From positions 3,472,001 to 3,536,000 of the forward strand of contig CDRNST010000122.1 of the NCBI GenBank assembly GCA_977016875.1: a DNA stretch of 64,000 bases, in the 5' to 3' direction. Source of the DNA: Pavona decussata. Its lineage: Eukaryota. The position numbers were made by a program, and so were the translations under genes. The notes under the pieces were generated by a model, which saw only the letters and a list, made by a program, of their open reading frames with translations, was not told where the DNA came from and ran no database searches. Below, piece by piece: positions 1,745-37,237 of the stretch (position 1 is the stretch's first letter; each line of letters begins with the position of its first letter).

Positions 1745-2029
1745 TCAGCAGTCACTCTCTCCCGGTTCGTCATCAAGCTCCTTCTCTGGTGGTGGACTGG
1801 GTCTGGCAAAAATGCTGGATATATCCGGATATTCCTGTACCTCTGCGCGTGTCTTGTACAAGGGATTAAAGAACCCGGATGCCTCTACAACTTGCGGTTC
1901 ATTACTGACTGGTTTCTTGGGCGTGTCGTAAGTGGGCGTTCCTGTCTTCTGAGTGGCAACTTTCTCCGGTTTGAACGGCACAGCGTAGAGAGCGTTTCCG
2001 TCTTCGTTTGTTTCAGTTGACTTCCTTTG
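1745..2029 (-). CDS. Constant exon C32 (last): cytoplasmic tail QRKSTE...FNPLY...ESDC*
   Basis: Pyrimidine tract + AG acceptor in phase 0; continues the NPxY series; stop at 1745-1747. Confidence 0.8.
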   Translation of the reverse strand, partial: QRKSTETNEDGNALYAVPFKPEKVATQKTGTPTYDTPKKPVSNEPQVVEASGFFNPLYKTRAEVQEYPDISSIFARPSPPPEKELDDEPGESDC

Positions 2030-5000
2030 CTGGAGAAAAATTAAAGAAGGAAAATGAAAACAAATCGTCCACCTTTTACTCTACGGAATACGAACTACAG
2101 TAAACTTAATGGGAATGCATGAAATAATGATAAAATTTACGTGGATTGCAGATGAGTGAAAGACTACCAGATATGCACAAAATAACTCGAAAAGAAAATC
2201 CTTTGGAATAGGAGGGAGTTACGGGAGGTTGGATACATTAAACTGCTCCAACACTTTTAGAAGTCCACTATGACTTGTACAGTAATTTGCCATACTTGGA
2301 GGGACGCTCCCTTCAAATGTCCAATACTTTCGTCTCATTTTAATTTGTTACGTTTGAACACTCAACACTGGACAATTGCAATAAGTCGTGCTATCAGATG
2401 GTTATATTATTGATTTTTTGGCATATGATATTATTTGAATATAGGGCCTCCGTTGAAAACAGTAATTTCATTGTAAATTAGTTGAAGGTGCTACCCTATT
2501 CAAATAAAGATATCATGCCATGTCATGTCCCGACAATCAGGCTCGACTAGTGTAACATTCAATTAAATATTTTGACTCAGAGAGCTTGCGAACATGCTAA
2601 AAATCAGCACTAATTTTTTACCTCTCTATAAGATGTAAACATGGGATTGGCGAAGCCCACAGCCTTAAGTTCCTCTTCCTCCTTTCTTTGTTCCAGTTTG
2701 TCCGGTTTGAAGCTGGTGTACATTGGATTCTCAAAGCCAGTCGTGGATTCAGATCTTTGCACCCTCTTACGCTCATTAGGTTCCTGGTAGATCGGATTGT
2801 CATGCATGGTGACATCTCTGTTGGCTTCCTCTTCTGTCGTTCCGTAAATCGGGTTGAAAGCTCCCATGGGCTGCTCCGCCTCTTGTTTAGCCATTTGATG
2901 TCTGTACATGATATCTGTGTACGTTTCGTCGTCATTTTCTCTGTACCGCTCTTGTTTTATGAACCTGCGTTGTTTTTCGCTTAGTCTGTTCCTCCGGCAA
3001 AGCAGGAGTCCCAAGAGGACGACAATCAACAGAAGCCCCCCGGTACCAGCGATGACGTAATACGTAAGCATGCTCGTCGAATGACGCTGGTTCTTCAGTG
3101 GCATGTCGTTAGCTTCCACAGGAACACAGTTTGAAATGCCCAAAAATTCTATTCTGTGCGCGGTGGACTTACAAAGCCTGTAATTAAAATCACCAGGTGA
3201 CCCACTTGTGATGTATTTGTTATTAACACACGTGTTATTAATACTGCACAAAACAGCCTTTACTGGAACACCCACAAGTTTAGTGTCCGACTTCACGATG
3301 ACAACAAACTCTACAACTGAGGGATTGTCTTCTGACGTGCTTCTCTTAGCTTTGGCTGTGTGTGTCAGACTTGGACTAATGATAAACACGTCCTCCACAT
3401 TAACCCAGCTTGAATCGTACTCATCTTTTGTTACCTCGGTCATCGGAAACGTAAGTCCTTCTATGATCTGCTCAAGTTGATACTGCCACTGCGGACTTGA
3501 CGCATCCTCACCTTCAGGAAAATATAACACTACCACAGCGTCTGATGATATACATTGAATTGCATTATACTTGTCGACGTTTGGTGGGACGCAAATTTCT
3601 GTCTTTTCGCATGATTCCTCTTTACACTCACCGGGCTTTCTCTGACAGACAGTTCCTTCGAAGCCTGCCGAGCAGTTACAAGTGAAGCTGCCTACTCCAT
3701 CCACGCAGGCCCCTTCCACGCACGGCTCACTCGCACAATCGTCTATATTCGTTTCACAGTGTACGCCAGTGTATCCAACCGCGCAAAAACAGCTGTATCC
3801 ATTTCTGAAAGGCGTACAAGTAGCACTGTGGTTGCATGGATTCGACAAACAGAGATCAATGAGTGTGCAGTCCGTTCCATTGTGGTATCCACTGGGACAC
3901 GTGCAGTTATAGTAGTTTACATAATCATGACAAGTGCCACCGAAACTGCACGGATTCGGTTGACAATCATCTACATCAGAACAGTTAAAGCCATCCCCCG
4001 TGTATCCTTCATTGCACATGCACGTGTAATTATACCAGTCAACGCGGCTGCACGTGGCGTCCACGTGGCACGCAGCTGATGGACAAGGATCAATTTTGGT
4101 CACATGAACTTCAACTGTACCGTTGAACGATTGCGGAGGAATGCCATTGTCTTCGGCTTCTATCAGAATCTTATATCCTCGAATGATGTAATCATCATAA
4201 CTAAGATGCGACTTCACGGTCAAATACGGCAAGTCTTTCTTTCCACCAGTGACAACCGAAGAATTAGCCGTACATTTATCTTCGATAGCAAACGTGTCCT
4301 GGTAATTCAGTAGAGTGTAATCCACTCTTTGTGTTCGCTCGGGGTTTCTGGATGTGACCTGCGCGATGCAGTAGCCGACAGACACGTTTTCTGGGATTGT
4401 CACGTTTCCTGGAATTAGTCTGATGTCATCTGGTGACTCGTTGACGTCAATCACGCTAATAGTGACGTCACTGATGACGCTGAGTGGAGGTCCTATGAAT
4501 TTCGCGGGCACATCTGTAGCACTGATGGTGACCTTGAGCACGGCTGGGGGATGAAGATTCTCGTAGTTCAGGAAAGATGGATCTTTGACAATGAGGGAGT
4601 TATCACTGTTGTTAACCTGGAGAGAAGAAAATGCAGTTTAGCTGAGGCATGAAACAGCTGGATTGCCCTGAAAGGGAGATCAACTTTCATAGAAAAAAAA
4701 TAGTTACGAGACGCGAATGAAGGTGTCATCATAAACAATATAAATAAATCGCAATGTTTACGGAAAACACATATCATCGCTGAGAAGATTCCAAGTAGGT
4801 CGTCTATATCGAACTTTAATTGGAACTTCTAAATAAATTTTAGTTTTTGACGAGGGAAAAAAGACGAGAATTAGTGAACCTACGAATAATGCCAACTCCA
4901 TCGAGAATCGAACCCAGGCCCCTCTAATGGCATCTACAAGTGGATTGCACAAGCTGTGTTTACACAGAAGCTATTTGATGAACCTCAAAAAGCTATGCTT

Positions 5001-8000
5001 TTCGGACACTATGGAATTCGAATACAAAGATAGCACAATTAAATAAATAAATAAACAAACAAACAAACAAGCAAAGATTTTCCGCTTTGTACTAATTGAC
5101 CTTATCTGGAACGACTCCAGCACCTTTTTTCAGTTAAGAGTTAAGAACTTGAGAGTTCTCAAGTAGGTGAACTTCAAAGTCAACATACCAGATTTATCCG
5201 TTAATGCAGCTTATGTCAATGTGTTTTTTTTATGCAAAAGTGAGCTCTTTCGGTGGCCTATTTTATCACTATTGAGGTGAAATTCACATTTTACATCCTA
5301 ACAATGACGTCGAAAACGAACAAAAGATAGCCATAATTGCTTTCAGACAACAAAAGGAAAATACAGTATTTTGGTTAGTTCAACATATTTTCTTAACCTT
5401 GCTCTTACAAAACTGCGTCTATCAAGGCAAACAATTCTCACCTGGAAAACTGAAGAGTAATTTCCGATGACAGTGAACACGTGACTTTGTCCTATATCCG
5501 GGTCTTTGCAAGTGAGAGGACCAATGACATAGCCCATCTGAACGTTCTCTTCCACGTCGGAGCTGTTCAAACGAATGTCGAACGGAGCTTCGTTAACATC
5601 AGAGAGTTGAACGCTGAAATTCCTTTTAACTGAGTACGGAGGATTCCCGTTGTCTTGGCATTCAACTGCAACTGTTTGGTGCAAAAGTAATAAATGAGAT
5701 ACGAAATAAACCATGCCACGAAAGAAGGAAGCAAGCAAGCAGGAAGGGAAGGAAGGAAGGAAGGAAGGAAGGAAGGAAGGAAGGAAGGAAGAAAGGAAGG
5801 AAGGAAGGAAGGAAGGAAGGAAGGAAATAGGAGAAAATAGGAAGGAAGGAACGTAAAAAATGAAAAGGAAAGCCGAAGTGAAAAGAAAACAGGAAAGAGG
5901 GAGGGACGAAAGAAAATGAAATTAATCGGAGTAAATGAAATGAAGACATATTTATTAGGTCACAGTCGCCTTCCACCATAGGGTCCTACCCCCACACCAC
6001 GAAAAAACATCCAGAAGTCGCCTTCACCAAACTCAACTATGTGTCTTTAATTTCTGTGAATACGAGGCTGAGAAAGAGCGGCTACCAATTCTCAGAATAT
6101 AATCAAGACAAATAAAGGGAATAAAGTAAAGGGAATTGCTATCCCCATCTACCTTGAATTGGAGCGTCCAAAAGGCTTTCATAATCCAGGTTAGCGCCTT
6201 GCTTGACGCGAATCTCTGAGGACGACTTAGACAACGGGCTAACATAAAAGTAATCTCCTCCTCCCAGGAGTATACAACTGTGTTGCTGTCCCACGTCTTC
6301 ATCAACAACACTTGTGTTGACTAACGAGGTTCCACCCGGGCTGTTCTCGGGTAACACGATCGTGTACGAGACGTTGTCGGGTGTCGAGTGAGACGAGTTC
6401 AAGATTATTTCCGACGGCGGGTCGTTGCAGTCCAGAACAGAAATACTCAGGAGTCCCTACAATTGAGAATGAAGAATTTAACCTTCCCCAAAGTACGAAA
6501 TCTTGTACTTTCGGCTTCCTTTTATTCAGTCCATTTTGCTTTCAGGAACATATTCTCATTGTAAAAACGGACTGTGTTAGCCTATGGGCTGCAGGAACAC
6601 ACGAAAACCGTCTGTGTTACGACAAGCAATCCCTAATATATCGAATATTGCACGACATCGATCAGGTTCTAAAGCAACTTGAATGAATATGTTTATTCTT
6701 TTACCCCTAATGTTTGTGTCCTATGAGCCTCGCTATCAGGATGATCTTGGACATTTCGAAATGAGGAAAAACAAATGTTTGAACAAACCTGTACTGAGAG
6801 GGGAGGGGAGCCATTATCAGTAGCACTGACGTTAATGTTGATGACTGGTGTAGCTTCGTAATCCAGTGAAACGTTATTCAGCAACAAGCTGCTTCCACTG
6901 GCAAAAAACAAATCTAAAAGAAATTGAAAAACAAAGATCATTATTATTTTAACTCACTCATTTCATATCTGCCGATTTCAGAAGCATTGAGTGTTGGGGC
7001 TTCGTATGTTTTGAAATAGCCTTCAGTCTGTAACTATAACTACTAATACTGGAAACAAGCGCGTGTTTAACTCAAACTTACCTCTGCCAACAGTTACACT
7101 GAAGAAATGAGTTTGATTGGCATCTTGATCTTGAGCCCGCAAGGTGCCCACAACTGTTCCTGCGGTAGCATTCTCATAGATTCCCCCGGATGTAAGACTT
7201 ATTACAGTGGGTGGGTCATTCGTGTCAATCACCTGAAAACAAATAAACGTAACTGTAATTGACATTAAGAAAAACTGAGGCTGCTTATGAAATATGCAAC
7301 TGAATTAAAAGCGTCTGAGATACTGTTCACATTCTCACAAATAATTCATGAAGAAAAAAAACAAAACAAAACAAAAACAAAGGGAATCACTACCGTGGCG
7401 GAGGACATGTGATTTTAACTACCATAAAGTTTGGTACACTTTTGCGTTGAATTATAAACGGTTTGAGAACCTGTTGTTCTCTCATCACTCTGCAGTGAAA
7501 CGAGAACAAATCATTTGAACAAAAAGATCATGTGTGTAATTCGTCCTTACCTGGATAGTGAAGGAGAGACTGGTATTGAGAGGCGGGTTACCGCTGTCCG
7601 TTGCAACCACTGTCACTTTGTACGAGCTTTGAACCTCGAAATCAAGCGTCCTTGTTGTCACCAGTCTTTTTCTTCTCAACTCAAAGGCGTTGGGCCCTGG
7701 TGACTGGTCTTTAATAGCCAGAGAGACATTGGCTTGTCCTGAAAACTGTACGTTTAAATGGAAAAAGCAAAAATTGAGATCAAAGCAGGTCAGAAAGTGA
7801 CCAGATGTTCACGCAAATACTAATGCAAATCTACTAGAAATGAGAACTTGAAAACATGGAAAAACGGCTGATTATACCTCGCCGTACTAATGTCAAAAGC
7901 TTTTCAAACGCATTTTTATTCACTGCAATGCAATTGGAAAACAACTGCTCTTTTCTTACCGGGAAGTCTGGATCACGAACACTGAGCATGCTCACTAATA

Positions 8001-10316
8001 CACCAGGGGGTTCGTTTTCGTTCACAGTCTGGGACGAGATTGACAGATTGTATGGAGCCTCGTTTACGTCAAGGACATTAATGACGAACAGTGACGACAC
8101 AGACAGTGGACTGGGTAAGAGCTCGGAACAGTTGACCTGACAAAGGAAATAAAGAGATAGATGTATAAATATTAGATGTTTTGGAGCTTGTGCTATTACA
8201 AAATAATTTTAGGACATGTGCTGTCAGTTTTGACAACGCGGCAGGGCGAGTCAAAATATACAAACAACCAGTAAAACAGTGACGCTACACACCAAAACGT
8301 CTAATGAGAGATTTGTTATACAAACGAATTTTCTATGTCTTCTATTAAACGTATCAAAGAAATCTGATGAGCGTCTGTGCGGTTTGGTACATACTTTGGC
8401 TAAAGCCTTTTAAAAATCATGGCGACTTCATTGATACTAAAATAAAATCAATGTACGTTGGGCTGAGAAGTGATTTACAGGAATTATAAAAATTTTTCAC
8501 CATTGCAAGCCGCTAACGGTATAAATACAAACAATTATTTAGCCTTTGTTTGACAAGAGTCACAGATCAAACAAACTCTGTGTCCTTACATCTTGTATTA
8601 CATAAAACTGGAACTGCAAGTGTTCTATGGAAAGAGAAAAACTGGAAGAGCCAAAACAAATTCCTTGGAGCAGGATGTGAACGAAAATAGCCACTTGTAT
8701 AACTACAAAGTCTTTACTTGAAACATGGTCACGGAGTACTCTCCCCACACCACTCCCCACTGTTTCATACCTCCGCCCTAGATGAAATGCTTGAACCTTT
8801 ATCCTGAAAACTCCTTTATCGTCCAATAAAATGGAGTGGCTTATTTTGCTCAGTAAAAACTATAATTAAAATGTGACATTAATCTGGAAAATCGTGGTTA
8901 ACTTACATTCACTGTGTACATGTCAACTTGTTCGTAATCTAAGGTGTTGTCAGAAACTACCAGAGTTACATGGTTAACAACCTGAAAATACAATGAAATT
9001 GTTAACATCACACTATTCAGGACAGTGTAATCCGTCAAATATACGGTCACGGACCAGTACGCCTTATTTCTCCCAAAAATCTTTATTCTCTCTTGTTTCA
9101 AGTGCTAATAAGCACTGAAACAAAGGTGCGCTTTGTCACTTCCTCAGAATCACTGAAAAGTATCGTTCAAAATTTCAAGAAAGCAGCAAATTTTGGTGAA
9201 AGATGTATCTTTGAGATGGCAAAACCTTTAAGTAATGCAATGTTCATATTTTCATTTCACTCTGTACGCACAATATGTATCCAACAATGAAAACATCTCA
9301 GCGAAGCACTTACTTTAAATGGCCCACCTCCCAGCACAACACAGTGGAACTTTTGTAAGGGAAGATGAAGGTTGTCAGGATCGTACACTGTCAAGTTACC
9401 AACAACTGTTCCAACGGGACTGTTCTCGGGAATCTGAAACATTTTAAACAAGGCTGTTTAAAACAAAAGCTGTTTAGGTGCAAACTGTTGTAGAACCTTC
9501 AAGAAAATCTCTCGAATTTGACCTTAATATGAGGCAAATATGTTCTCCATGTGAGCCATTTTTGCGTTTCCCGGATGAGAAAATGAGCGTGGCAAAAATG
9601 GTTTCCGATGGCGGGTTAATATCGCAGCCTTAGTTTTGAGTGTTCTAGCTTCAGAGAAAACTGTTTTGTTTCTAGCCGGATCGACGCATATGTGTCATCC
9701 AACATGCCTCAAAATGCCTAACCTTAATACAAACAATTCTGCCGATTGAAAAAAGAAATTGTGTGGGAAATGGCAAAACAAAAAACTCTGTCCAATATGA
9801 AGTACGTTTTTTCACAGTAACGTGCATTTCTGGTCAAAAGTGGACGAAACTCACAAGTCTGTCATACATTACCTTGTTGTTATTCAGTGAGATATTTTGC
9901 GGCTTTTCATTGACGTTATTAATGCTGACCACAAACGAGCTTGTCACTGAGTAAGGTGGAAAACCGCTGTCTGTACTGTTCACAGTCACTGTGTAGTTGG
10001 CGTACTGTTCGTAATCGAGTCCAGACTTCTGAAGAGTAACCCGGCCGGAAGGCGATTCAACCATGAATAGGTTAAGAAGACCAGCGGAACTACAGAGAGA
10101 AAGCAAAAGTTAATTGTAAAATTATAAATGCTAAAAAAACCCCTTAAAATCGGTTATGATGGTTTTCTGATGGGACAACGAAGGTGTACACTTCTTGCAC
10201 TAGGTTTCTTTCCGCGTGTCGTTCAGTCTCTCTCGATGATCAGTTAAAAAATACTTTAAACAGAGAATTTGACACAACTCATAACTGAAGGGATGGTAGG
10301 ATAACTTTATTATTAT

Positions 10317-10355
<39 letters not shown>

Positions 10356-13300
10356 TCAATACTCGTTAGCTTGCTATGGTATGAATCCAATATAAAATTC
10401 CCTATTGCCATATCAGTTTGTCAAGACGCCAGCTCACGTTTCTTAGCAACCACGCTTAGAAAAGCACAAACAAAAACACCAACCCAAACCCGTCAAGAAA
10501 CAAAACGATAAACGAATATAACTTCATACCTCTGGGTATGATGTCCCTGTCCAACCACATCAGTTATCTTGTACTGGTGCGTCTGCCCGACATCCTGATC
10601 AGCGGTTGTCACAGTGCCTATGTACTCCCCGGACAGATTGTTTTCGCTTACACTAAGTGGTCCGCTAGCTGATATGCCCGTGGGCGGATCATTTCTGTCT
10701 TTGACGATCACCGTGAAATTCTTTGTCGTGCTAAGACCTACGAAAATTAACATTACACTATTATTCTTTCTTACCATCCTCAAATACTCAGGTACAGATT
10801 ACCGCGGTGGACAAGGGTCAGGATTGCGCGCACTTTTTCTGATCTTCCTGAGTGATTAATAGAATTTTTCTCCTCACTGCATCAATACATTATCTTACGT
10901 ACTAAAAAATCAAACAGTGAACAACAATGTTTGAAAAACAGTTGGCCAAAGGAAAAAAGAGTTTCTAAAAACAAACGAGAATATCTCCATCTGCTCTTTT
11001 GGTAAAATGTTCTTGCTTTTCATCTTGCACTTTCTTCAGTTGTGAAGGCCGTTTACAAGGAAGAAGCTGTGGTGATTAGAGAGACACTGAGTTACTCGTC
11101 CGAGTTCATATCGCGCAGACGTTATTGTAGAATAGATCTGTAATAGGACCTTAACACCCAGAGCCTCAGCCTCTTATATAAAGCCTTGGAGTTAAAGGGG
11201 AAGTATTACGCAAATCTACTGTCATTTCATAACCCAAAAATGTTTGTCTGTCAGGTAGAAACAAAGAAATAATTGTCAAGTTTGTTATAAATTTTCACCC
11301 CAGTGCAATAAAACTGTCGATTAGTGCCTCTGGCCAGAGACAGATTAGGTCGGTATGGATTGAAACTTGAAAAATGCTAGGCTAATGTTTTTCAAGTTCT
11401 TGCATTTTTGTTTCTAAAAAGTGCTTGAACAGATCACGAGTTGTTCCTTTCAAGAATTAAGTTGACTTCTTTCCTCTCGTCATTCTTGAATTATTTGGCA
11501 GCTGATTGAAGGTCTTATTTCACCATTTTTAACAAAACACACCAAAAACCCCATGACACTTCCCCTTTAACCTCTTCCCGAGATGTAGTTTTAGAACGCC
11601 TCTTGGGGGACCTTTGGAACACTCCGGTTCAAATAGCCAATCAAAGATGAGTAGTGACAATTAAATCGTGATACGTACGTCATTCCTTTACGCGGGAAAA
11701 GCAGTTCTAAAAATAAATCTACTCGGGAAAGGGTTGACTCAAGGAATTAATACAGACAGAGGCTCCTAGTCGTCGGCTCCTGATTTATGGTCACCTTTGT
11801 TATCCGTAGATTTTATAGTCAGCCGCCAAGTATTCTTGGTTTCGTAATCCAAGCTTCTTGTCGTGTTTAGAGCGCCATTGTCAATTACGAAAGGAATGCT
11901 CCCAGGGGGACCCACAATATCATAGGTAAATGTCTGCACCACAGTCTTCTCATTATCCGGGTCAGCAGTATCCAGGACTCCCACAGTGACAATCCCAGCA
12001 TTCTCAGCGACCTCGTTAATAGATAGCGTAATATCATAGGGCTTCTCATTGACATCAACGACATTGATCCGAACAGTCTTGTCTACTGACAAAGCCGGCT
12101 TTCCATTATCTCGACAACGCAGGTTCACATTGTAGCTCTTTGTCTTCTCATAGTTCAAATTCCCGGTTACAACAAGATAATTTGATGATGAGTTGACCTT
12201 AAAAGGCGCATTGACAGCATTAAGGACAACACAGGAGTGACTCTGCCAGGGTCCTCTAGGTCCCTTGTCATCAGGGTCTGATACTGAAATGTTACTGACC
12301 AGAGTGCCTTGAGGGCGGTTTTCTTGAACACTGCCTGAGGACAAAATGATGTCCGTCGGTCGCTCGTTAACGTCACGAACCTAAATAAGGGAAGAATTGT
12401 GAGATGACTGAAACAAAATAAGAAAGCCAGTCACCGTTTAGTCACCAGATCTAACAAACTATAAACGACAGGCGACCGAAAACAAAATGGATTGAAAAGA
12501 AGACTTGTGCTGGCGCCCTGTCGGATTTGAACTCCGCCCTTCATGTATGGAAGGATGTCACGTACACTGTCGCATATCCACTACAATAGCCAGGTAAAAG
12601 TGACAGGGGGAAGGAAAGGAAGAAACTATTCAGAGTTCGTGTCAACTTAGGGTTGCAATGACGCGACCCAAACAAAAAAAAGTCGCACCACTTTCCCAAT
12701 CAGTAAGAAGTAACACAACACCAATAGGGTCTTGAAGCAACTATTTTCCCGCGCAAAGCACTCGTTACATTTATTTGCTTTACAATTGGTTCATTGGGAT
12801 GTTCGCGTTTACTCTGATTGGCCGGAATGACTACTTTGATTTGGTTCAAATTTTTCTCTAGGAGGAAAACAAACATACCTGAATAGTAAACGTTTTATCA
12901 ACGCTCAGCCTTGGACTTCCATTATCCCGGCTTCTCACCGCTATAGAGTATGTCGACTTCCGTTCGTAATCCAAGTTTGCGAAAAGTGAGGTATAAATCT
13001 TGTTTCCACGGAGCCTAAACTTCCAACCGCCGTTATTTATTAAGCTGTAGCTATGCGTCTGGCGGGTGTCTTCATCAATAGTCGCCAAATCACCAACAAA
13101 ACCGTTATTAACGTTCTCGTCGATAAAAGCAGTATCGCCTCCAGCTAAGGTTATATTGCTTGGCCGGTCATTAATATCGAGTATCATAACCTTAAACGGC
13201 TGGACGTGGAATAAGCTGCTATTATCAGTCACGCGAACCAAGATATCTTCAGTGGAGCTTGCTTCATAGTCGAGGTCACCGCTGACCTTAAACAGCGTCG

Positions 13301-26900: not shown

Positions 26901-29900
26901 GAATGTTTCCATTGTAACTGAATGAAGTATTTATCAAAGTATTCTTACTTGAAGTGAAGGGCAATCCCTCCCTCGACATCTTTTGGAAATCTTGACCGTT
27001 CTTGTTCGTTGCTTGGATCCAACGGCGCATTTTTCACTGCATGCTCCCCACGAACCCCAAGTATTGACCTTAAAAAAATATTACAGAGATGCAATCCCAC
27101 ATAAAAATCTTTCTCGCTTCCGTGTTCGGGTACTACAGATTTTAATAATAATCTACTACAATTACATCTTCATCACAAGCATGTTTTGATGTTCCAACTG
27201 TGACGGTGATCATGGAGACTTACAGTTCATTTCAATTTGCAGGTTTTGACGTCACTAAAATCTGCTGGTCAAGAACAACACTGAATGAAGTCACTAACAA
27301 AGTAAAACGGTTGGTAGTTTTAGCCGAGTTGTTCAGTAGTTACTATACCCTGAGTACCAGAGTTTTATTTCTCGCGGGTAGTAATACTAATACTTGAGGT
27401 AGGGCTAGGGGTAACTACATTCAAATCCCATGTCCATGTTTTGTTACTCTTTAGAGTTGATTATCTCTTTGAGGTTTTACGCAATGAAAATATGCAGTGA
27501 TAAGTTTGTATTATCTGACCTCGTAATTTTTTTGGGTAAAATTGTTGGTGATATTTAGAACGTAAAAAAAAAAAGGAAGCTCGGAAAATTAGAAAATGTT
27601 AGGAAACTAGAGATAAATGTACATTTAGTCCATACTGGAAATTAAGGGCTTTTTAACACATTTCCATCATAAGCAAAAGTGTACCCCACCCCTTAAGAGC
27701 AAAAGGTTTAGCGATTGAGGAAGACTTGGTGCAGGGAATGAGCACTTAAGGCGATTTCTCGGATATCATATCAACCTACCACACAATCTCTGTTATCCCG
27801 ATAATCAGTACACCGCTTGCTCTCCGACCTAGCCCCGCATGCTTTTCCGCGGCATACCGCTGGTGAAGCAATAGAGCGTGTTCGGGTAGACCATCCGCTT
27901 CCACAGCCGTTACTGCAGAGCGACCAGGCCGACCAAGCTGACATGACGCAATCTTTGTTGTTGTACTGTGAGCAGGAAGTTGTGTCTCTCAGCGCTGGGC
28001 AGGCTTTACCGTTACAGTAAGGCTGAACTGTTATTCGCCGTGTTCTTGTCCTTGAACCTAAATAGTAAAAAAAATTAAATCCAGTTTATTTAGACCGGAT
28101 CTTTGATATTAAAATCAACACAAGACTTAAGGCTAACTTCAGCCGAAAAACTACAAAAACACATCTGACCGGGAACTACATTGTATGTTAACAATTCCCT
28201 ATTTTTCCACGAGAGCGTGGAGAGAGTGTCAAACTACCGAGGAGGCCCTTGTCACTCTTGTCAGAGTGTATAGCATTGAAAAGTAGGTCACCCCCTCCGC
28301 ATCGGTGGTTTTGGCATTGTTTCCTTGATAGAAACATACGATCTGGACGTTCGCCTGCAAACAGCTGAACATTTACCATGATTTATACGCGAATCTGATT
28401 GGCCCAAAGGTCATAGCATGCTATTCTTTTAATAATCATTGGATTACAAGCGATTTGAAAAATATACTTTTTTATAAATATGACCTAAATGTCATTGACT
28501 TTAATTACAACTACTTTTTAATTAATTAATTAATTAATTAATTAATTTATTTATTTATTTATTTATTTATTAGACTTTGCCTTTGCCACTCAGGCAGGGG
28601 AGCCACTACAGTAAGAGCCAATAACAGCGGTGCCCTAAATTAAGGCTAAGGTCTGAGCGTTTCCCCTCAGTTAATAATGTGATGTTCTTAAAAAACAGGG
28701 CCGGGTTGTTCGAAAGCTGATTAACGTTAATCTACCGGATTAAAAGTTAATCGAGGTTTTCATCTAGCTCGTTAAAAACGGTTTAAACGCTAATTTCAAG
28801 CTAAAGGTTAAGAAAGGTCTAAGTCAAAACTGAGGGCCAAAAATCTTTTGGAAGAATCGTTATTGATTAGTGATTAAACTCGAATCAGAGTCACGTTAAT
28901 CCAGGATTAGCTTAATCGGGCTTTGAACCAGGACCCAGCATATAAACCCTGAAAGTTAAAGAACATCACAATTTCTGCGGACAACTATCAGCCGAAAAAT
29001 TAGTTGATTTAAGAGCAAAATTGGCCTCGAAGCCTACGAAAACCACGCCAAAAATAAGTGTACGAAGAAAAAACTATCCAACTCTGGGTCAACTTTAACC
29101 TGGTTTTACACACGGCTTATAGAATCGAAAATAAGTTGTTGTTTTTTTAAGATTTTTAACGTTTATAGTAATAAGTATGCCTTATGCCTTATGTTCAAGC
29201 AAATTTGGAAACGATGAAAAGGATGACTGCCACAAAACAACCTATATTTGAGTTAGGTCACTGTCAGTAGTAGAAAACAAAGTTATCTGACAATCTCTGC
29301 ACCATCAACATCAGAGTGTATTCTATGTGAACTTGCGTAACCTACCTGTACCGCACGTGTTAGAGCACGCACTCCACGCGGTCCACGAGGACACTGAGCA
29401 GTCCCTGGGACAGCAGCTGTGTGTGCACGAGCGTGTTTGCCGCGTCGTGGGGCACGGGCCGCTGCAGTACGGTTGGGTGACCACTGTACGCGTTTGATGC
29501 TGGATTCCAGGACCACATTTGCCATTGTTCGGTACACATGACGACCATGACCCCCACGAACTCATCTGAAGGAGGCAAAATGATTTGGTTTAGTCTGAGT
29601 ATGATAGCCAACAAAGCACGCAGCACCAAATAGGCTATGATCATCTCGTATCCAATATGCGCGAGTGGAATAATCGTTTCATTAAAAACAACCACGGAAA
29701 TTTGCTTAATTCTGTTGATTTAGTGTTATTTTCTCCCTTCTAACGCGTACTGTTACCCTATTTGTGGGGCATGGTATAATGGCTCGTATACCGTGATGGC
29801 TAAACCAATCGAAACTCTGGAATTTCGTTACCCAATGCCTCAGTTTTTAATAACTACAAGTATGTGAATCAAAGAGGATATTGAAATATCTTTGAAAAAC

Positions 29901-32900
29901 AAAACTTCGAATAAAAGAGAAAATGTAAAAAATACCTTGCATGGAATGGGAACAGGAGTACAACGACTTGTGTCGCTTGTTGTAGGACACGCTTTTCCGC
30001 CACAGTATGCTCCTAAAGTAACTCTTCGCGTTCTTGTTTTCGTGCCACTGTTTACGCTGCACTGGCCTGTCGGGGCGGAACAGAATCCCCAAGGTGTCCA
30101 ACTGGTGACCTACATAGAAAAGAGACACGTACCTAGTGAGCTGACACGAAGGCTGTAGTCAAACGATAACAGAAAAATGTAACCAAACGTGTACAAACTC
30201 TCAAGGGGACTGTAATAAAAAATAATAGATGTATTTAATCCTGGAAACAAAAAAGGACAATAAGGGCTTCTTTTTTTCAAGAATAAAAGAGTACTTTCGG
30301 AAATAACCTTCGCAAGCTTAGACACGTCTACACGGTGCAGGTCAAATCAATTGTAATATTGATTACCTGACAGTCCCTTGGGCAACAGGGCCCTTGGCAA
30401 GATTTCGTCTCTCTCAAGGTCGGGCATGGGGTACCGCTACAAGAGGCCGCGGTTGTCACTCTTCTTGTGCGAACCTGGTACCCACTCCTTCCGCAAGCTG
30501 CGTTGCAGCTTCCATAGCTTGACCAGCTGGAGACCGCACAGTTCACTGGGCAGCATCTGGAGGTAAAGAAGACTCCATCAAAACGAATACAAGTACAAGA
30601 GATAAGGCATCGAAAGTAAAGCAGTGGGCTTTCCCAAAATGTAAGGATCTGAAAACGGCATATTCTGGTAAAAGTGCAAAAAAATGCACCTCCCTTTCCC
30701 ATTTGTTTCGTTTACAGACGTTAATTCGTTTGTTTGTTCCTATATGCTTGTTTACTGAGGGCAGTTCGTTTGTTTGCTATGTATGCGTTACTATGTGTTT
30801 GTTTACTGAGGGCGATTAATGTGTTTGTTTGTTAGTTATCTGTTTGTTTACTGAGGGAGATTCATAAAATGGGTTTGCTAAGTTTGCTTCAGAGCCTCTC
30901 AGATTTACTGAATAACGTACTGAAAAGCTTATTATTTCCGAATTAGAATCTTGAGCCATGTTTCACTCTCTATACTTCTTTTTATCTGTGGATACAATCC
31001 TAAAGTGCTCAGTAAAGAACACAGTTGACAATTTATTGATTCCTCACACACAAATACAACATAAACAAATTAAACATTAACAAGGCAAGGGAGCCCGAGG
31101 AAGCCAATAAGGCTTATGTAACGGACTACCTTGGATTATTCTATTGTTAAAGAATCATTTAATATCCATCTTAATATATAAATATCTCTAATACCCGAAA
31201 ATAATCGTTAGATTAGAATAAAAAATGAAAAGCAAAAGGAAAGGAAAAAGAAGAAAAAAAGCACACTTAAGTACACTAAAAGAAGTAACATCTTTCTATA
31301 TTGAGAGAAAACTCAAGTTTAGAAGTGAACACAGCAAAACTAGGAGCATTCTGAACTTCAGGGTTAAGAGAATTATACAATTTTGGTCCTTGAAAACGGA
31401 GTGAAAACTTTCTTACGTTTGTTCTATATAAAGTAAGAAGGAATTCTTACTTCTAGTGTTATATGAGTGTACGTCAGAGTGAAGTAAAAACATTTCACTC
31501 GAAACTATCAAGAAGAAGACCGCATTTGTAAAGATACATAATTTTGCCTATTTGGAGCTTGATTATGTTCTCAAATTTTAGACTTTTTAAGTTCTTATAA
31601 ATAGGATCGGTATGTGCGTCAAAACCACTCTTCGAAATTATTTTAATAACCCTTTTCTGGAGTGTAATTAAACGTTTACGACTTCACTGACAAGTAGAGC
31701 CCCAGACACTTGCACAAGCACGAGTGGTTATTATATTTTATTGAGCTTTGTCATACGAAAAAAAAAATACAGAAAGGAAACAAACAAATTACACAGATAC
31801 AAAGTGGAAAGAAAGAGGCAAAACAGCTGGCGAAACCATGACTACCATGGACCAGCTGATACTGTTCATTTGCTGTATCGAGGTGATTTTGACTTTGTGA
31901 CCCTTAGGTTTAAGTCTTTTCTGTGTCTTTTTGAGTCGCAGTAAAAATGTTGCTCTTTCAAAGACTCCTGCGCTGACTTTGCCATGCAATTGAATGGAAT
32001 ACGGTTTAATACCAAAGGATTTGTTGTATGGTGAACTTGCCTTTGGCACAAGAACTGCTGTCAGAAGCAACCATGATGTATGAAAACGTGACATAGTTTC
32101 ATTGAACTGCGGTTGACAATGGAAGCAAGTTGCCAAGAGAGATTGTAAACGCAACACATTTTTAAAGCTTCTGTGAAGCAGACTTTGTACTTCCGTCATT
32201 TAGACATTTTGTGAGTTGGTAAGCAGCTTTGTTGAAATTTTGCACTAATCTTCTTTTCTTTCTATTCTTTTATTGTTTTTATTCTTTCAATCAAATAATT
32301 CACTTTGTAATTTAGTTACAAGCTATAGTTACTTTGTTGCTCTGGATTTTTAGGGTATTGCCGGAATAGCCCAGAAATTTTTGTATTTTAATCTCGACCC
32401 GAACAGACCGCATATCTTTCCACCAAATGAAGAGAATATTGAGGATCACAGGGAAAGACCGGGTGCCTAATTAAACTTCCGCGTAGAAACGCACATGCCC
32501 AAGCAAGCCCCCTTAATATAGGGCCTCTTTCAAAGACTCCTGCGCTGACTTTGCCATGCAATTGAATGGAATACGGTTGAATACGGTTGACAATGGAAGC
32601 AAGTTGCCAAGAGAGATTGTAAACGCAACACATTTTGAAAGCTTCTGTGAAGCAGACTTTGTACTCCCGTCATTTAAACATTTTGTGAGTTGGTAAGCAG
32701 CTTTGTTGAGATTTTGCACTAATCTTCTTTTCTTTCTATTCTTTTATTGTTTTTATTCTTTCAATCAAATAATTCACTTCGTAATTTAGTTACAAGCTAT
32801 AGTCACTTAGTTGCTCTGGATTTTTAGGGTATTGCCGGAATTGCCCAGAAATTTTTGTATTTTAATCTCGACCCGAACAGACCGCAACTCTCTCAACCAA

Positions 32901-35900: not shown

Positions 35901-37237
35901 TTCGCTTAGCTGGTAGATACAATGTAATTATATTATGTAACTTAACGATTATGTAACTAAGCAAAAGTTACTAGTCTGCAACGTATGTCTGCGTAGCAAG
36001 CACTCAGGTACATACCCGGGGGACTCTCATATGAAAGGTGCGCGGATGCTCGTCGTCTCGCTTAGGGGTGTAAATTTCGGATGTTGGTCTCACTTAGGGT
36101 CTTCTGGGCAAAACGCCATTATATTTAACGTGAAGGTCTCGTTAAGGGTTGCATGAGAAGAAATATAAAAATATATATTTGTCTGTGTTTTAAAATGGTC
36201 TCTTTCAAAAAAAAGCTCGGGGCACGCCCAGATTGGTCTCTTTTAGGGGTTTAATTTAAAACTTCCAACGAGCATTCCCGCGCGGAAAATGGAACGAGAG
36301 CAAAAAATTGGAGGCATTCAAAAAGCGAAAAACACTACGGAAAAACTTACTACGCAAGCTCACTCCTAACTTACTAACCACTCCCTACTGATGAAACTCT
36401 ATCTTACCGACAGAAGATAAAGTTGTGGCGAATGTGTCATGCAGAAGAGCTGCTGAAAAACATTTCGGCCATTGCGCACCCTGAACAATGCATCAGTTGT
36501 AATCCAGAACTTGTCCGTTAGAACAAGCGATAAAATGAAGTGGCGGAAACAACTAACAATTATCCGAATTTAAAATTAACCATCAAGTGAACTCACTTGA
36601 AAGGTATTTCATACAAGCAAGAAGCCTTTCGCTAATCAAGAATCATTGGAGCCTCATCTGAAGGCAAAATTCAAAATTTGAATTTTGAAAGAATAACATT
36701 CAAAATTGTCACACCGCTTCAAACAATCCTTCTGTGACTAAACAAAGTAACTGACAGAGTCATTAGGAGAAAATTGGAAAAAAAAAGACTGGCGCTCAAA
36801 CGGTTTGCAACTTACACTCCAGTATTGCAGCTTCGCGTCTGGGTACGAGTTGTTGGGCAAGCCGTGCCACTGCAGCTAGGATTCTGTGTAATCCGCAGCG
36901 CGCGCTTCTGTGTAAACGTGCCACAACCTCTGCATGGAGGACTCCAGGCGTTCCAACTCCATACACAATCGACCGGGCAACATTGAGTGTTGCAGTGCCT
37001 ACTCTCCTTGAGAGCACCAGTACACGATGCTCCGCCGCATATGGCATGAACTGCAATTCCTCTTGTGCGGAGCTGCGTCCCCGTAGCACATGACTTTGTA
37101 CAGGTGCTCCAAGGTTGCCAGTCCCCTAGAGCACAGTCGCGAAAACAACGTCTTCGACGTCTACGGCGCCACGAATCAACGGCGCAAAAAATTGCACTTA
37201 AAAGGAGAAGAGCTATAGACAAGGTGACAAGCTTCAT
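1745..37237 (-). CDS. Giant non-classical cadherin-like receptor (signal peptide, 8x TSP1, EGF, Sushi, ~26 EC, 4-5 EGF, TM, NPxY tail); isoform using the nearest first exon V1, ~3,936 aa, 33 exons
   Basis: Manual exon chain V1 + C1-C32 with GT-AG boundaries and matching phases; summed CDS is 11,811 nt (divisible by 3) ending at TGA 1745. Repeated cadherin motifs (xPEN, DxD, LDYE, DxG, DxNExP/DxNDxP), TSP1 WxxWxxC...RxR motifs, EGF cysteine patterns and a hydrophobic TM segment. Confidence 0.85.
2622..4616 (-). CDS. Constant exon C31: last EC repeats, EGF repeats, juxtamembrane region, TM, NPxY-rich tail
   Basis: ORF 2610-4541 extended to the AG acceptor at 4617-4618; donor GTAAAA; 1995 nt. 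Confidence 0.92.
5442..5671 (-). CDS. Constant exon C30 (cadherin)
   Basis: VAVECQDNGNPP...DVNEAP...DPD; phase 1 to 0. Confidence 0.85.
5725..5850. repeat. (GGAA)n microsatellite
   Basis: Direct inspection. Confidence 0.95.
6153..6456 (-). CDS. Constant exon C29 (cadherin)
   Basis: DCNDPP...LPENSPGG...LDYES; phase 0 to 1. Confidence 0.85.
6789..6913 (-). CDS. Constant exon C28 (cadherin)
   Basis: LDYEAT...ATDNGSPPLS; phase 1 to 0. Confidence 0.8.
7082..7232 (-). CDS. Constant exon C27 (cadherin)
   Basis: VIDTNDPP...YENAT...DQD; phase 0 to 1. Confidence 0.85.
7551..7745 (-). CDS. Constant exon C26 (cadherin)
   Basis: LDFEVQ...ATDSGNPPL; phase 0 to 0. Confidence 0.85.
7960..8136 (-). CDS. 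Constant exon C25 (cadherin)
   Basis: DVNEAP...VNENEPPG...DPD; phase 0 to 0. Confidence 0.85.
8907..8981 (-). CDS. Constant exon C24 (cadherin, 75 nt)
   Basis: VVNHVTL...LDYEQ; phase 0 to 0. Confidence 0.8.
9314..9433 (-). CDS. Constant exon C23 (cadherin)
   Basis: IPENSPVGTVVG...DPDN; phase 0 to 0. Confidence 0.85.
9873..10089 (-). CDS. Constant exon C22 (cadherin)
   Basis: LDYEQ...STDSG...NVNEKP; phase 2 to 0. Confidence 0.85.
10318..10354. repeat. (TAA)n microsatellite
   Basis: Direct inspection. Confidence 0.95.
10530..10737 (-). CDS. Constant exon C21 (cadherin)
   Basis: DRNDPP...VSEN...DQD; phase 1 to 2. Confidence 0.85.
11196..11566. mobile_element. TTAA-flanked MITE (Kolobok-type, AGGGGAAGT...ACTTCCCCT)
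   Basis: TTAA|AGGGGAAGTATTACG ... CATGACACTTCCCCT|TTAA terminal inverted repeats. Confidence 0.8.
11795..12380 (-). CDS. Constant exon C20 (2 cadherin repeats)
   Basis: ORF 11766-12344 extended to the acceptor; phase 0 to 1. Confidence 0.9.
12879..13583 (-). CDS. Constant exon C19 (2 cadherin repeats)
   Basis: Within ORF 12858-13628; AG/GT boundaries; 705 nt. Confidence 0.9.
13985..14290 (-). mobile_element. LINE (CR1/L2-like) 3' fragment
   Basis: ORF2 C-terminal-like motif RTEIAKRSFYYYGCTLFNEL, followed by AATAAA and a (TTC)n tail. Confidence 0.6.
14655..15253 (-). CDS. Constant exon C18 (2 cadherin repeats)
   Basis: Within ORF 14646-15275; phase 1 to 0. Confidence 0.9.
15955..16191 (-). 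CDS. Constant exon C17 (cadherin)
   Basis: FFSTADPDN...LNYE...DSGDPP; phase 1 to 1. Confidence 0.85.
16379..17480 (-). CDS. Constant exon C16 (~3.5 cadherin repeats)
   Basis: ORF 16353-17480; phase 0 to 1. Confidence 0.9.
17507..17899. mobile_element. MITE with GGACGGTGCCTA inverted termini (Kolobok-type)
   Basis: TCAA|GGACGGTGCCTA ... TAGGCACCGTCC|TTAA. Confidence 0.75.
17910..17962. repeat. (GAT)n microsatellite
   Basis: Direct inspection; intronic. Confidence 0.95.
17985..18168 (-). CDS. Constant exon C15 (cadherin)
   Basis: FAARDED...VDYET...DSGNP; phase 2 to 0. Confidence 0.85.
18376..18611 (-). CDS. Constant exon C14 (cadherin)
   Basis: CLSQGGSSCLLNYE...DVNDRP; phase 0 to 2. Confidence 0.85.
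18690..18790 (+). mobile_element. Short LINE ORF2 3' fragment
   Basis: Translates to FMFAAPRLWNMLP, resembling the F..AAP.LWN.LP motif. Confidence 0.45.
19050..19199 (-). CDS. Constant exon C13 (cadherin, 150 nt)
   Basis: LSSSVVDENS...DQD; phase 0 to 0; not in the ORF track, translated manually. Confidence 0.85.
19599..20894 (-). CDS. Constant exon C12 (4 cadherin repeats)
   Basis: ORF 19572-20894; 1296 nt; phase 0 to 0. Confidence 0.92.
21213..21632 (-). CDS. Constant exon C11 (cadherin)
   Basis: ORF 21192-21632; phase 0 to 0. Confidence 0.9.
21948..22097 (-). CDS. Constant exon C10 (cadherin, 150 nt)
   Basis: LSSNSVDENS...DPD; phase 0 to 0. Confidence 0.85.
22481..22778. other. Assembly gap (298 N) inside intron C9-C10
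   Basis: Run of N. Confidence 1.
22790..22900 (+). mobile_element. LINE reverse transcriptase fragment
   Basis: LLLVDLTGVFDTIDHSVLVRRL resembles the RT motif DLSxAFDTVDHxxLL. Confidence 0.6.
23043..23151 (-). CDS. Constant exon C9 (end of first EC)
   Basis: STDNGSPP...DVNEKP; phase 2 to 0. Confidence 0.85.
23560..23756 (-). CDS. Constant exon C8 (first EC)
   Basis: VPENRPRGTKVG...DPN...FDYE; phase 0 to 2. Confidence 0.85.
23916..24115 (-). CDS. Constant exon C7 (Sushi/CCP-like domain)
   Basis: TYPVTCSLGCPKDYSITGASTVTCQTSGQWS...C, then NDPP leading into EC1; phase 1 to 0. Confidence 0.8.
24330..24733. mobile_element. MITE with 16-bp TIRs and a 6-bp TSD
   Basis: CTAGAA|GAGGGGGGTGAATAGG ... 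CCTATTCACCCCCCTC|CTAGAA; internal GATCCGC subrepeats. Confidence 0.85.
25773..25926 (-). CDS. Constant exon C6 (end of TSP1, EGF-like, start of Sushi)
   Basis: NNGCEHKC...CSCNAGYNLAPNNKNC; phase 0 to 1. Confidence 0.85.
26949..27068 (-). CDS. Constant exon C5 (TSP1)
   Basis: VNTWGSWGACSEKCAVGSKQRTR; phase 0 to 0. Confidence 0.85.
27780..28057 (-). CDS. Constant exon C4 (TSP1)
   Basis: SRTRTRR...DCVMSAWSAWSLCSNGCGSG; phase 1 to 0. Confidence 0.85.
28697..28938. mobile_element. MITE with imperfect long inverted termini
   Basis: GGGCCGGGTTGTTCGAAAGCTGATTAACGTTAATC ... GATTAGCTTAATCGGGCTTTGAACCAGGACCC. Confidence 0.65.
29346..29565 (-). CDS. Constant exon C3 (TSP1)
   Basis: MSSWGSWSSC...DCSVSSWTAWSAC; phase 0 to 1. 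Confidence 0.88.
29936..30109 (-). CDS. Constant exon C2 (TSP1)
   Basis: VTSWTPWGFCS...KTRTRR...CGGKACP; phase 0 to 0. Confidence 0.85.
30367..30556 (-). CDS. Constant exon C1 (TSP1); phase-2 acceptor compatible with all five variable cassettes
   Basis: TTCTTTACCTCCAG|A TGC TGC CCA GTG (CCPVNCAVSSWSSY...); donor GTAATC. Confidence 0.88.
31030..31720 (-). mobile_element. LINE (CR1/L2-like) 3' end
   Basis: Minus strand translates VWGST...RLITLQKRVIKIISKSGFDAHTDPIYKNLKSLKF, typical of an ORF2 C-terminus; AATAAA near 31035. Confidence 0.7.
31952..33185. repeat. Local tandem triplication (~470-570 bp units)
   Basis: CTCTTTCAAAGACTCCTGCGCTG recurs at ~31953, ~32525 and ~32999, with long shared flanks. 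Confidence 0.9.
36017..36285. mobile_element. MITE-like repeat at the proximal edge of the duplicated block
   Basis: Imperfect inverted termini (CGCGGATGCTCGT ... ACGAGCATTCCCGCG) and repeated TTAGGGG motifs. Confidence 0.5.
36816..37237 (-). CDS. Variable first exon V1 (intact): signal peptide, W-polyR, 2x TSP1
   Basis: ATG at 37237 (MKLVTLSIALLLLSAIFCAVDS-WRRRRRRRC...), 422 nt, ends CNTG-GT|GTAAGT. Confidence 0.88.

What the first reader, a model, noticed from the sequence alone, without database searches (positions are those of the whole stretch)
1745..37237. Unusual domain architecture: TSP1x8, EGF, Sushi, ~26 EC, EGF, TM with no visible catenin-binding tail
Seen: a continuous in-phase exon chain joins the TSP1 exons through EGF and Sushi exons into the cadherin stack (...YCRRNNDPPSQ|IVLSGSASVPEN...). 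No LamG domain or classical cadherin cytoplasmic domain is visible. Known: Fat, Dachsous, Flamingo, classical cadherins and Hedgling do not have an N-terminal TSP1 array. Inference: a lineage-restricted cadherin that holds a ligand-binding TSP1 head on a long EC stalk. Automatic annotation would probably label it 'Fat4-like' or split it into a spondin-like gene and a cadherin gene.
Basis: partly seen in the sequence, partly recalled or inferred. Interest (0 to 1): 0.7.

Follow-up and report, generated by a model that had tools for sequence, protein, structure and literature searches.

The report
Giant coral cadherin with thrombospondin-repeat head
A single 35-kb coral gene appears to encode a 3,935-residue membrane protein with eight thrombospondin repeats on a stalk of 26 cadherin repeats and an endocytosis-type tail, a domain combination I found described nowhere, though no transcript evidence could be obtained.

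Summary
On the minus strand, 37237 to 1748, a chain of 33 stop-free exons can be joined in phase. All 32 introns are GT-AG, and the model is 11,808 nt (3,935 aa).

Pfam scans, exon by exon, give:
- signal peptide and poly-Arg
- 8 TSP1 repeats, 1 EGF, 1 Sushi
- 26 cadherin repeats
- 4 EGF
- a SEA/MAD-like membrane-adjacent domain
- TM and tail

No exon hits LamG or the catenin-binding domain.

The Sushi-to-EC1 intron is only 159 bp. The same junction and phase recur in two other coral-like genomes. One of them, about 55% identical, carries the whole head-to-stalk chain collinear within 20 kb. Two separate genes are therefore very unlikely.

The N gap lies in intron 10. Its flanking exons are phase 0/0, and the orthologous introns hold no exon.

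New here:
- The tail has five conserved (F)xNPx(Y/F) motifs and a conserved C-terminal S-D/E-C.
- The membrane-adjacent domain has a conserved KAKR loop.
- Exon 1 is one of at least eight tandem signal-peptide plus 2-TSR exons. The scan noted this array separately on this window.

No full-length database model was visible. The joined protein was not searched.

Verdict: real, a new variant of the cadherin superfamily. Function is inferred.

The parts
36816..37237 (-). Exon 1 (V1): ATG, signal peptide, run of seven Arg, TSP1 repeats 1-2; donor GT|GTAAGT, phase 2
   Evidence: (TSP1_spondin 5.5e-14, 2 stretches).
30367..30556 (-). Exon 2: TSP1 repeat 3. The acceptor recreates the inter-repeat linker CNTxCCPVNC.
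   Evidence: The same acceptor and phase occur in L005.
29936..30109 (-). Exon 3: TSP1 repeat 4
29346..29565 (-). Exon 4: TSP1 repeat 5 and the start of repeat 6
27780..28057 (-). Exon 5: the rest of TSP1 repeat 6 and repeat 7
   Evidence: (3.5e-18).
26949..27068 (-). Exon 6: TSP1 repeat 8
25773..25926 (-). Exon 7: EGF-like domain
   Evidence: cEGF 4e-5, FXa_inhibition 7e-5, both below the curated cut-off; conserved in L005.
23916..24115 (-). Exon 8: Sushi/CCP domain; donor CAG|GTTAGA, phase 0
   Evidence: Sushi 25.5 bits, above cut-off. The junction is conserved in L004 and L005.
23560..23756 (-). Exon 9: first half of EC1, 159 bp downstream of the Sushi exon
23043..23151 (-). Exon 10: second half of EC1, ending in the DVNEKP linker
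22481..22778 (.). Assembly gap, inside intron 10; no exon expected in it
19599..22097 (-). Exons 11-13 (22097-21948, 21632-21213, 20894-19599): EC2 to about EC8
   Evidence: (Cadherin 1.8e-39 for exon 13).
16379..19199 (-). Exons 14-17 (19199-19050, 18611-18376, 18168-17985, 17480-16379): EC repeats, an internal duplicate of the exon 11-13 module
   Evidence: 45% identity to exon 13.
11795..16191 (-). Exons 18-21 (16191-15955, 15253-14655, 13583-12879, 12380-11795): EC repeats, a third copy of the module plus further ECs
5442..10737 (-). Exons 22-31 (10737-10530, 10089-9873, 9433-9314, 8981-8907, 8136-7960, 7745-7551, 7232-7082, 6913-6789, 6456-6153, 5671-5442): EC repeats in small exons
4092..4616 (-). 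Start of exon 32: end of EC25 and EC26
   Evidence: (Cadherin, residues 79-180).
3648..4091 (-). Exon 32: four EGF domains
   Evidence: EGF 1.1e-17 in 4 stretches; EGF_3 9e-11.
3072..3647 (-). Exon 32: Cys-rich stretch and a SEA/MAD-like membrane-adjacent domain with no Pfam match
   Evidence: pLDDT 82, pTM 0.80; PCDH15 MAD12 Z 6.5 and 6.3, CDH23 MAD28 Z 5.8, CELSR1 Z 5.0.
3342..3353 (-). KAKR, followed by Ser, in the only disordered loop of that domain; nearly invariant in 21 orthologues; candidate proprotein-convertase site
   Evidence: Cleavage is inferred.
3000..3065 (-). Transmembrane helix YYVIAGTGGLLLIVVLLGLLLC, followed by RRNR
2622..2999 (-). Cytoplasmic tail, part 1: FNPIY, DNPIY, GFENPMY, GFANPMF; exon ends ...SYRE|GTAAAA
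   Evidence: (motifs conserved in most of the 14 orthologues aligned; sequence diverges right after YR[EQ]).
1748..2029 (-). Exon 33: tail part 2 with GFFNPLY, LYAVP, DISSIFA and C-terminal ...ESDC, then stop; AATAAA at 1507
47472..47892 (-). V2: copy of exon 1, frame broken in the middle, same donor
53233..53702 (-). V3: intact alternative first exon (signal peptide, Arg run, 2 TSP1, same donor phase)
57494..57913 (-). V4: copy with an in-frame TGA
58973..59385 (-). V5: intact alternative first exon

Best explanation
One gene encodes a type I membrane protein of about 3,935 residues.

Anatomy:
- signal peptide and a short Arg run
- a head of eight thrombospondin type 1 repeats, the first two supplied by one of several alternative first exons
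- one EGF and one Sushi domain
- a rod of 26 calcium-binding cadherin repeats, roughly 100 nm or more if extended
- four EGFs
- a SEA/MAD-like membrane-adjacent domain carrying a conserved basic loop
- one transmembrane helix
- a tail of about 220 residues

The tail lacks catenin-binding sequence. It carries five (F)xNPx(Y/F) motifs, the type read by PTB-domain adaptors in LDL-receptor-family, Amnionless and integrin beta tails. It also has a conserved C-terminal S-D/E-C.

Most likely mechanism (inferred): the TSP1 head, held far from the cell on the cadherin stalk, binds a matrix, glycan or microbial ligand. The tail couples that binding to adaptor-driven internalisation or to the cortical cytoskeleton. 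This is not an adherens-junction cadherin.

My odds are about 0.85 for the anatomy (one gene with this architecture), about 0.35 for the endocytic-receptor mechanism, and 0.6 for the statement as a whole.
For: Shown:
- Domain content exon by exon.
- A 33-exon in-phase GT-AG model without stops.
- A 159-bp Sushi-to-EC1 intron without a polyA signal, and no signal peptide or start codon in the EC1 exon frame.
- The same junctions and phases in L004 and L005.
- The full collinear chain (V exon, TSP1 exons, EGF, Sushi, EC exons) on one strand within 20 kb in L005, at 49-71% identity.
- Single copy in the genome.
- TM helix.
- Five NPx(Y/F) motifs conserved in orthologues, against about 0.03 expected by chance in 220 residues.
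- Weak tail hits to Integrin_b_cyt (E 0.0035) and the Amnionless C-terminus (E 0.19), both over NPxY-type stretches.
- A confident model of the membrane-adjacent domain whose best fold matches are cadherin MADs.

Established knowledge: FxNPxY is the LDL-receptor internalisation signal and a PTB-domain ligand. TSP1 repeats bind glycosaminoglycans, CD36 and microbial or apoptotic-cell surfaces in other proteins.
Against: - There is no transcript evidence of any kind.
- No full-length predicted protein with this architecture was seen. The representative search was swamped by EGF-rich proteins.
- Fold matches are moderate (Z 5-6.5, below the level the tool calls safe).
- NPxY motifs also serve talin/kindlin binding, so the tail does not discriminate between endocytosis and anchoring.
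- Ligand binding by the head is untested.
- Use of V1, rather than another V exon, is inferred from position and splice phase only.
Confidence: 0.6

Rival explanations
1. The same single protein is a structural anchor rather than an uptake receptor. The TSP1 head sticks to extracellular matrix or skeletal organic matrix. The NPxY motifs recruit talin/kindlin-type proteins, as in integrin beta tails, to tie the matrix to actin.
For: The tail's best Pfam hit, though sub-threshold, is Integrin_b_cyt (E 0.0035). Corals are reported to add N-terminal TSP1 arrays to transmembrane skeletal-matrix proteins such as mucin4-like (PMC4890752, PMC8382919). MAD-type domains occur in force-bearing cadherins.
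Against: Three of the motifs are the FxNPx(Y/F) form typical of internalisation signals. No expression or localisation data exist. This protein is not among the cadherins named in the skeletal proteome papers read, which describe a classical type III cadherin.
Confidence: 0.28
2. There are two adjacent genes: a secreted TSP1-EGF-Sushi protein ending ...PPSQVRR*, and a separate cadherin gene. The first reader joined them by mistake.
For: If the donor at 23916 is not used, a stop follows three codons later. There is no RNA evidence for the junction.
Against: Only 159 bp separate the Sushi and EC1 exons, with no polyA signal, no start codon and no signal peptide for the cadherin part. The donor, acceptor and phase are conserved in two other species with introns of about 250 and 1,700 bp. 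Order and strand are conserved at 55% identity.
Confidence: 0.05
3. It is an ordinary member of a named family (Fat, Fat-like, Dachsous, CDH23) whose extra domains are annotation noise, or the architecture is already catalogued under an automatic name.
For: The EC count (26) is close to Dachsous and CDH23 (27). The MAD-like domain resembles those of CDH23 and PCDH15. Long annotated proteins could not be searched, so an existing automatic model cannot be excluded. [quoted passage not shown]
Against: There is no LamG (Fat) and there are no 7TM or GAIN domains (CELSR). EGFs and TSP1 repeats are present, unlike Dachsous and CDH23. The EC exons have no close family in the PDB search; the best matches are CELSR1 and clustered protocadherins at about 1e-35 to 1e-25. 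Five literature searches found no TSP1-headed cadherin.
Confidence: 0.07

Closest known systems
CDH23 and PCDH15 (cadherin-related, tip-link cadherins)
   Same: A long uninterrupted EC stack (CDH23 has 27). A ferredoxin/SEA-like membrane-adjacent domain before a single TM, which gave the best fold matches. No catenin-binding tail. A C-terminal motif that may bind PDZ domains.
   Different: They have no TSP1, EGF or Sushi domains and no NPxY-rich tail. Fold similarity is only moderate (Z 5.8-6.5), with 8% identity.
Fat / Fat-like and Dachsous cadherins
   Same: Giant single-pass cadherins with about 27-34 EC repeats. Fat has EGFs between the ECs and the membrane. Automatic pipelines would probably call this gene 'Fat4-like'.
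   Different: There is no LamG here. The N-terminal TSP1 array, the Sushi domain and the tail are different. No sequence family match was found beyond generic EC repeats.
Hedgling (cnidarian/sponge cadherin)
   Same: A non-bilaterian cadherin that carries a foreign N-terminal module on a cadherin stalk, with EGFs near the membrane.
   Different: The Hedgling head is a Hedgehog N-domain plus VWA, not TSP1 repeats. This comparison rests on my own knowledge and PMC12549020; it was not tested by sequence here.
LDL-receptor family, Amnionless, CED-1/MEGF10: NPxY-tailed uptake receptors
   Same: Single-pass receptors whose short tails carry FxNPx(Y/F) signals for PTB adaptors. There are EGF domains next to the membrane. 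The Amnionless and integrin beta tail profiles give weak hits.
   Different: Their ectodomains are unrelated, and none has cadherin repeats. The similarity is at motif level only.
Transmembrane mucins (MUC12/13/17) and the Notch HD domain
   Same: An EGF, SEA-like domain, TM module next to the membrane (language-model look-alikes score 0.83, a lead only). A cleavable loop inside a SEA-like fold; Notch S1 is a furin site (own knowledge).
   Different: There is no G|SVVV autoproteolysis motif and no mucin repeats. Cleavage here is only inferred from a conserved KAKR loop.
Clustered protocadherins / UGT1A (variable first exons)
   Same: A tandem array of first exons, each with its own start codon and signal peptide and the same donor phase, upstream of shared exons.
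   Different: Here the variable exon encodes only the signal peptide and two TSP1 repeats, not the whole ectodomain. No RNA evidence exists, and I found no shared promoter motif.

Membership tests
Cadherin superfamily | Two or more consecutive extracellular cadherin repeats with calcium-binding linker motifs | tested here: met
   Pfam Cadherin hits in the EC exons. There are 25 DxNDxP linkers and 26 LDYE-type motifs.
Classical cadherins (including type III) | Cytoplasmic catenin-binding domain (Pfam Cadherin_C), and LamG/EGF before the membrane in type III | tested here: not met
   No Cadherin_C or Laminin_G hit in any exon, even at E up to 10 for the tail.
Fat / Fat-like | About 32-34 ECs followed by EGF and LamG domains | tested here: not met
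   There are 26 ECs and EGFs are present, but there is no LamG. The only Cadherin_FAT4_N hits are sub-threshold.
CELSR / Flamingo | HormR, GAIN and seven transmembrane helices after the ECs | tested here: not met
   One hydrophobic segment only. No GAIN or 7TM hits.
Dachsous | 27 ECs running directly into the membrane, with a Dachsous-type tail | tested here: not met
   Four EGFs and a 190-residue domain lie between EC26 and the TM.
CDH23/PCDH15-type cadherin-related proteins | A membrane-adjacent domain (MAD) of ferredoxin-like fold after the last EC | tested here: inconclusive
   The best structural matches are MAD12, MAD28 and the CELSR1 MAD, but at Z 5.0-6.5 and rmsd 3.4-5.9. EGFs intervene between EC26 and the domain.
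Hedgling | N-terminal Hedgehog signalling domain and VWA | tested here: not met
   The N-terminal exons hit only TSP1 families.
TSP1-repeat (TSR) superfamily | TSP1 repeats with WxxW and a six-cysteine pattern | tested here: met
   TSP1_spondin is above its cut-off in 5 of the 6 TSP1 exons, and WxxW is present in most repeats. This is a domain class, not a family assignment.
NPxY-signal uptake receptors (LDLR-type) | A cytoplasmic FxNPxY motif that binds PTB adaptors and drives internalisation | not testable with these tools
   The motif is present five times and conserved. Binding and uptake need experiments.
Variable-first-exon gene clusters (Pcdh-like) | Each variable exon is transcribed from its own promoter and spliced to shared constant exons | not testable with these tools
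   The genomic layout fits: 8 V exons, 6 of them intact, with the same donor phase. No RNA data could be obtained.

The most novel reading that the evidence does not exclude
The gene is a diversified recognition receptor. Each cell, or each condition, chooses one of at least six intact first exons and so displays a different pair of outermost TSP1 repeats on a common 26-EC stalk. Binding of a microbe, symbiont, apoptotic cell or non-self surface is then coupled through five NPxY signals to uptake. That would be a cnidarian counterpart of promoter-choice diversity, used for recognition and engulfment rather than neuronal self-avoidance.
Probability: 0.2. Interest if true: 0.85.

Novelty: new variant of a known kind. 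Interest (0 to 1): 0.58.

Why it matters
Cadherin family surveys list Fat, Dachsous, Flamingo, classical, CDH23-type and Hedgling architectures in non-bilaterians. A giant cadherin with a thrombospondin-repeat head and an LDL-receptor-type tail would add a new branch.

It would also show that the long cadherin rod can serve as a stalk for a recognition module tied to endocytic adaptors, rather than as a homophilic adhesive. TSP1-repeat proteins have been implicated in symbiont uptake in cnidarians (PMC5446238), so a membrane-anchored, internalisable TSR receptor is a concrete candidate to test.

The gene is conserved in many coral-like assemblies, yet it is fragmented where annotated. It is therefore likely to be missing from current coral gene catalogues and expression atlases.

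Tried and rejected
- **Full-length relatives.**
  - The exhaustive representative search with the last exon returned mostly EGF-rich proteins. The only orthologues were exon-sized frames.
  - The word search cannot see proteins longer than 1.75 times an exon.
  - Absence of a full-length model is therefore not evidence of absence. Records of this or a very near genome may also be withheld.
- **Spliced transcripts among Logan/ENA hits.** All are genomic frames that read into introns.
- **Alternative acceptor for exon 2 at 30664.** Rejected. The apparent upstream similarity to L005 is a translated pyrimidine tract, and the CAG|A acceptor at 30556 is conserved.
- **Paralogous TSR-cadherin genes.** None found. 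The C-terminal module, the Sushi exon and the EC exons are single copy. The V-like exons on contig C198 are a partial duplicate with no cadherin exons in the next 20 kb.
- **Shared promoter motif upstream of the V exons.** None found by simple alignment.
- **Foldseek on the membrane-adjacent domain.** Nothing significant. VIA-align gave only moderate matches.
- **Literature.** Five searches found no TSP1-headed cadherin. PMC3420208 is not held.
- **Joined protein.** All searches were exon by exon, by reference.

Full report
**What is there.** The finding lies on the minus strand. Stop-free segments of the window, scanned against Pfam exon by exon, give this order from 37237 down to 1748:
- An exon with a start codon, a hydrophobic signal peptide (MKLVTLSIALLLLSAIFC), seven arginines and two TSP1 repeats.
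- Five more exons with TSP1 repeats (TSP1_spondin E from 5e-8 to 3.5e-18). This makes eight repeats, one of them split between exons 4 and 5.
- An EGF-like exon, then a Sushi exon (25.5 bits against a cut-off of 20.7).
- Twenty-three exons of cadherin repeats, plus the first part of exon 32.
- A 1,995-nt exon holding the last cadherin repeat, four EGFs, about 190 residues with no Pfam match, a transmembrane helix and a cytoplasmic stretch.
- A last small exon.

No exon hits Laminin_G or the classical cadherin cytoplasmic domain. Counting 25 DxNDxP linkers and 26 LDYE-type motifs gives 26 cadherin repeats.

**Is it one chain?** I scored donor and acceptor pairs for every neighbouring pair of segments. 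I kept those at the ends of the conserved coding blocks. The result is 33 exons and 11,808 nt, or 3,935 codons plus a stop. All 32 introns are GT-AG, the phases match, and there is no internal stop.

That intron is 159 bp. It has no polyA signal, and the EC1 exon frame has no start codon or signal peptide. There is no room for a gene end and a gene start between the Sushi domain and the first cadherin repeat.

**The assembly gap.** The gap at 22481-22778 lies in intron 10, between exon 10 (ends 23043) and exon 11 (starts 22097). Both are phase 0. The join reads ...DVNEKPTAIQ|LSSNSVDENS..., which copies the exon 13 to 14 join ...DVNDAPSAIV|LSSSVVDENS.... The frames that touch the gap are not cadherin-like. 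In two other species the same two exons are neighbours, and the introns between them (302 and 778 bp) hold no cadherin-like frame.

**Other species.**
- The last exon and the 432-codon exon 13 each find about 25 orthologous single-exon frames on ENA and Logan contigs, at 54-95% identity.
- The only named hit is a hypothetical protein of the stony coral Desmophyllum pertusum.
- I fetched four orthologous loci.
- In L005 (about 55% identical) the whole chain lies on one strand within 20 kb. It runs from a V-type first exon with the same signal peptide and Arg run, through the TSP1 exons, EGF, Sushi and EC1, into the EC stack.
- The V-to-exon-2 junction (phase 2, CAG|A acceptor) and the Sushi-to-EC1 junction (phase 0) are the same in L005. 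The Sushi-to-EC1 junction is also the same in L004.
- In the Desmophyllum annotation the locus sits at a contig end and is split into models of 396, 395, 156 and 258 aa.
- The gene is single copy in this genome. The closest relatives of exon 13 are internal duplicates, so the stalk grew by tandem duplication of a multi-EC module.

- The large exon does not end the protein. In most of the 14 orthologues aligned the sequence is conserved up to ...NPMFxxYR[EQ] and then diverges at once. This marks a conserved donor.
- A further exon (2029-1748) is conserved at 56-73% in three species, with the same acceptor.
- The tail is about 220 residues. It carries FNPIY, DNPIY, GFENPMY, GFANPMF and GFFNPLY, all conserved, against about 0.03 such motifs expected by chance.
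- It ends in a conserved S-D/E-C.
- Its only Pfam echoes are sub-threshold hits to the integrin beta tail and the Amnionless tail. Both fall over NPxY-type stretches.

- The 190 residues before the membrane fold confidently (pLDDT 82, pTM 0.80).
- The best structural matches are the membrane-adjacent domains of PCDH15, CDH23 and CELSR1 (Z 5.0-6.5), with SEA domains lower down.
- Language-model look-alikes are SEA-containing transmembrane mucins (0.83, a lead only).
- The one disordered loop holds KAKR followed by Ser, nearly invariant in 21 orthologues. It is a candidate convertase site, comparable to the Notch S1 loop. This is inference.

- Exon 1 is not unique. The contig carries eight tandem copies on the same strand. 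Five are in the window and three lie just beyond it.
- Each has a start codon, a signal peptide, an Arg run and two TSP1 repeats. The seven copies whose 3' end I read share the phase-2 donor GT|GTRAGT; the donor of the eighth (V8, ending CNTS) was not checked.
- Six copies are intact. V2 has a frameshift and V4 has a stop.
- The scan recorded this array as separate findings on this window. I only checked its layout.

**How it probably works.** The anatomy is that of a long-reach surface receptor:
- a TSP1 head at the tip
- a calcium-stiffened rod of 26 repeats
- a possibly cleavable SEA/MAD-like domain at the membrane
- a tail built from the signal that LDL-receptor-family proteins, Amnionless and integrins use to recruit PTB-domain adaptors

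I therefore favour ligand capture by the head, coupled to adaptor-driven uptake. Matrix anchoring through talin-type binding is the main rival. Nothing in the sequence supports catenin-linked junctional adhesion. All functional steps are inferred.

**Comparison and novelty.** Tested against their defining features, the protein is a cadherin-superfamily member. It fails the tests for classical, Fat, Dachsous, CELSR and Hedgling families. It is inconclusive for the CDH23/PCDH15 type. Its EC repeats have no close family among solved structures. Five literature searches found no cadherin with a TSP1 head. Two leads came from the papers read:
- Corals are reported to have added N-terminal TSP1 arrays to another membrane protein, mucin4-like (PMC4890752, PMC8382919).
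[quoted passage not shown] I could not test its homology.

**Limits.** I did not see a full-length database model. The joined spliced protein was deliberately not searched.

Noticed in passing
L006:1977-2411, L006:6815-7261, L007:1197-1616 (window-equivalent 65977-66411, 70815-71261, 75197-75616): Three more intact V-type first exons (signal peptide, Arg run, 2 TSP1) lie on the same strand just beyond the window. The array therefore has at least eight members over about 39 kb.
   Followed up: partly
L008:345-827 (G000 contig C198, about 1.11-1.135 Mb): A second cluster of V-like exons sits on another contig. One of them, with its flanks, is nearly identical to V3 and to sequence downstream of V1. 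No cadherin exons occur in the next 20 kb. This is either a partial segmental duplicate or an assembly duplicate. Another V-like exon lies on contig C93 at 2977770-2978195.
   Followed up: partly
window 31792-33218 (minus-strand frames): Three copies of a short interspersed element lie in the 6.3-kb first intron. They give near-identical frames (...IQPYSIQLHGK.SAGVFERGPILRG...).
   Followed up: no
window 41415-42610 and 48763-49977 (+ strand): Two near-identical mobile-element-like open frames lie between V exons. They are apparently part of the unit duplicated with V1 and V2.
   Followed up: no
window 61681-62871 (+ strand): A 397-codon open frame lies on the opposite strand, between V5 and the next V exon. 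It was not examined.
   Followed up: no
window 36816-37237 and all V copies; L005:1219-1635: Every V exon has a run of 5-8 arginines directly after the signal peptide. The run is also conserved in the species that is about 55% identical. It could be a convertase site or a polyanion-binding patch.
   Followed up: no
L001 (Desmophyllum pertusum MU826354.1, contig end): The public annotation splits the orthologue into four small models. The last one carries a faint 'Amnionless' label that most likely reflects the NPxY tail exon.
   Followed up: partly
window 17796-17985 and 5442-5921: Coding-looking low-complexity runs (poly-His; SFLP repeats) lie in introns next to exons 16 and 31. They could mislead gene predictors.
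   Followed up: no
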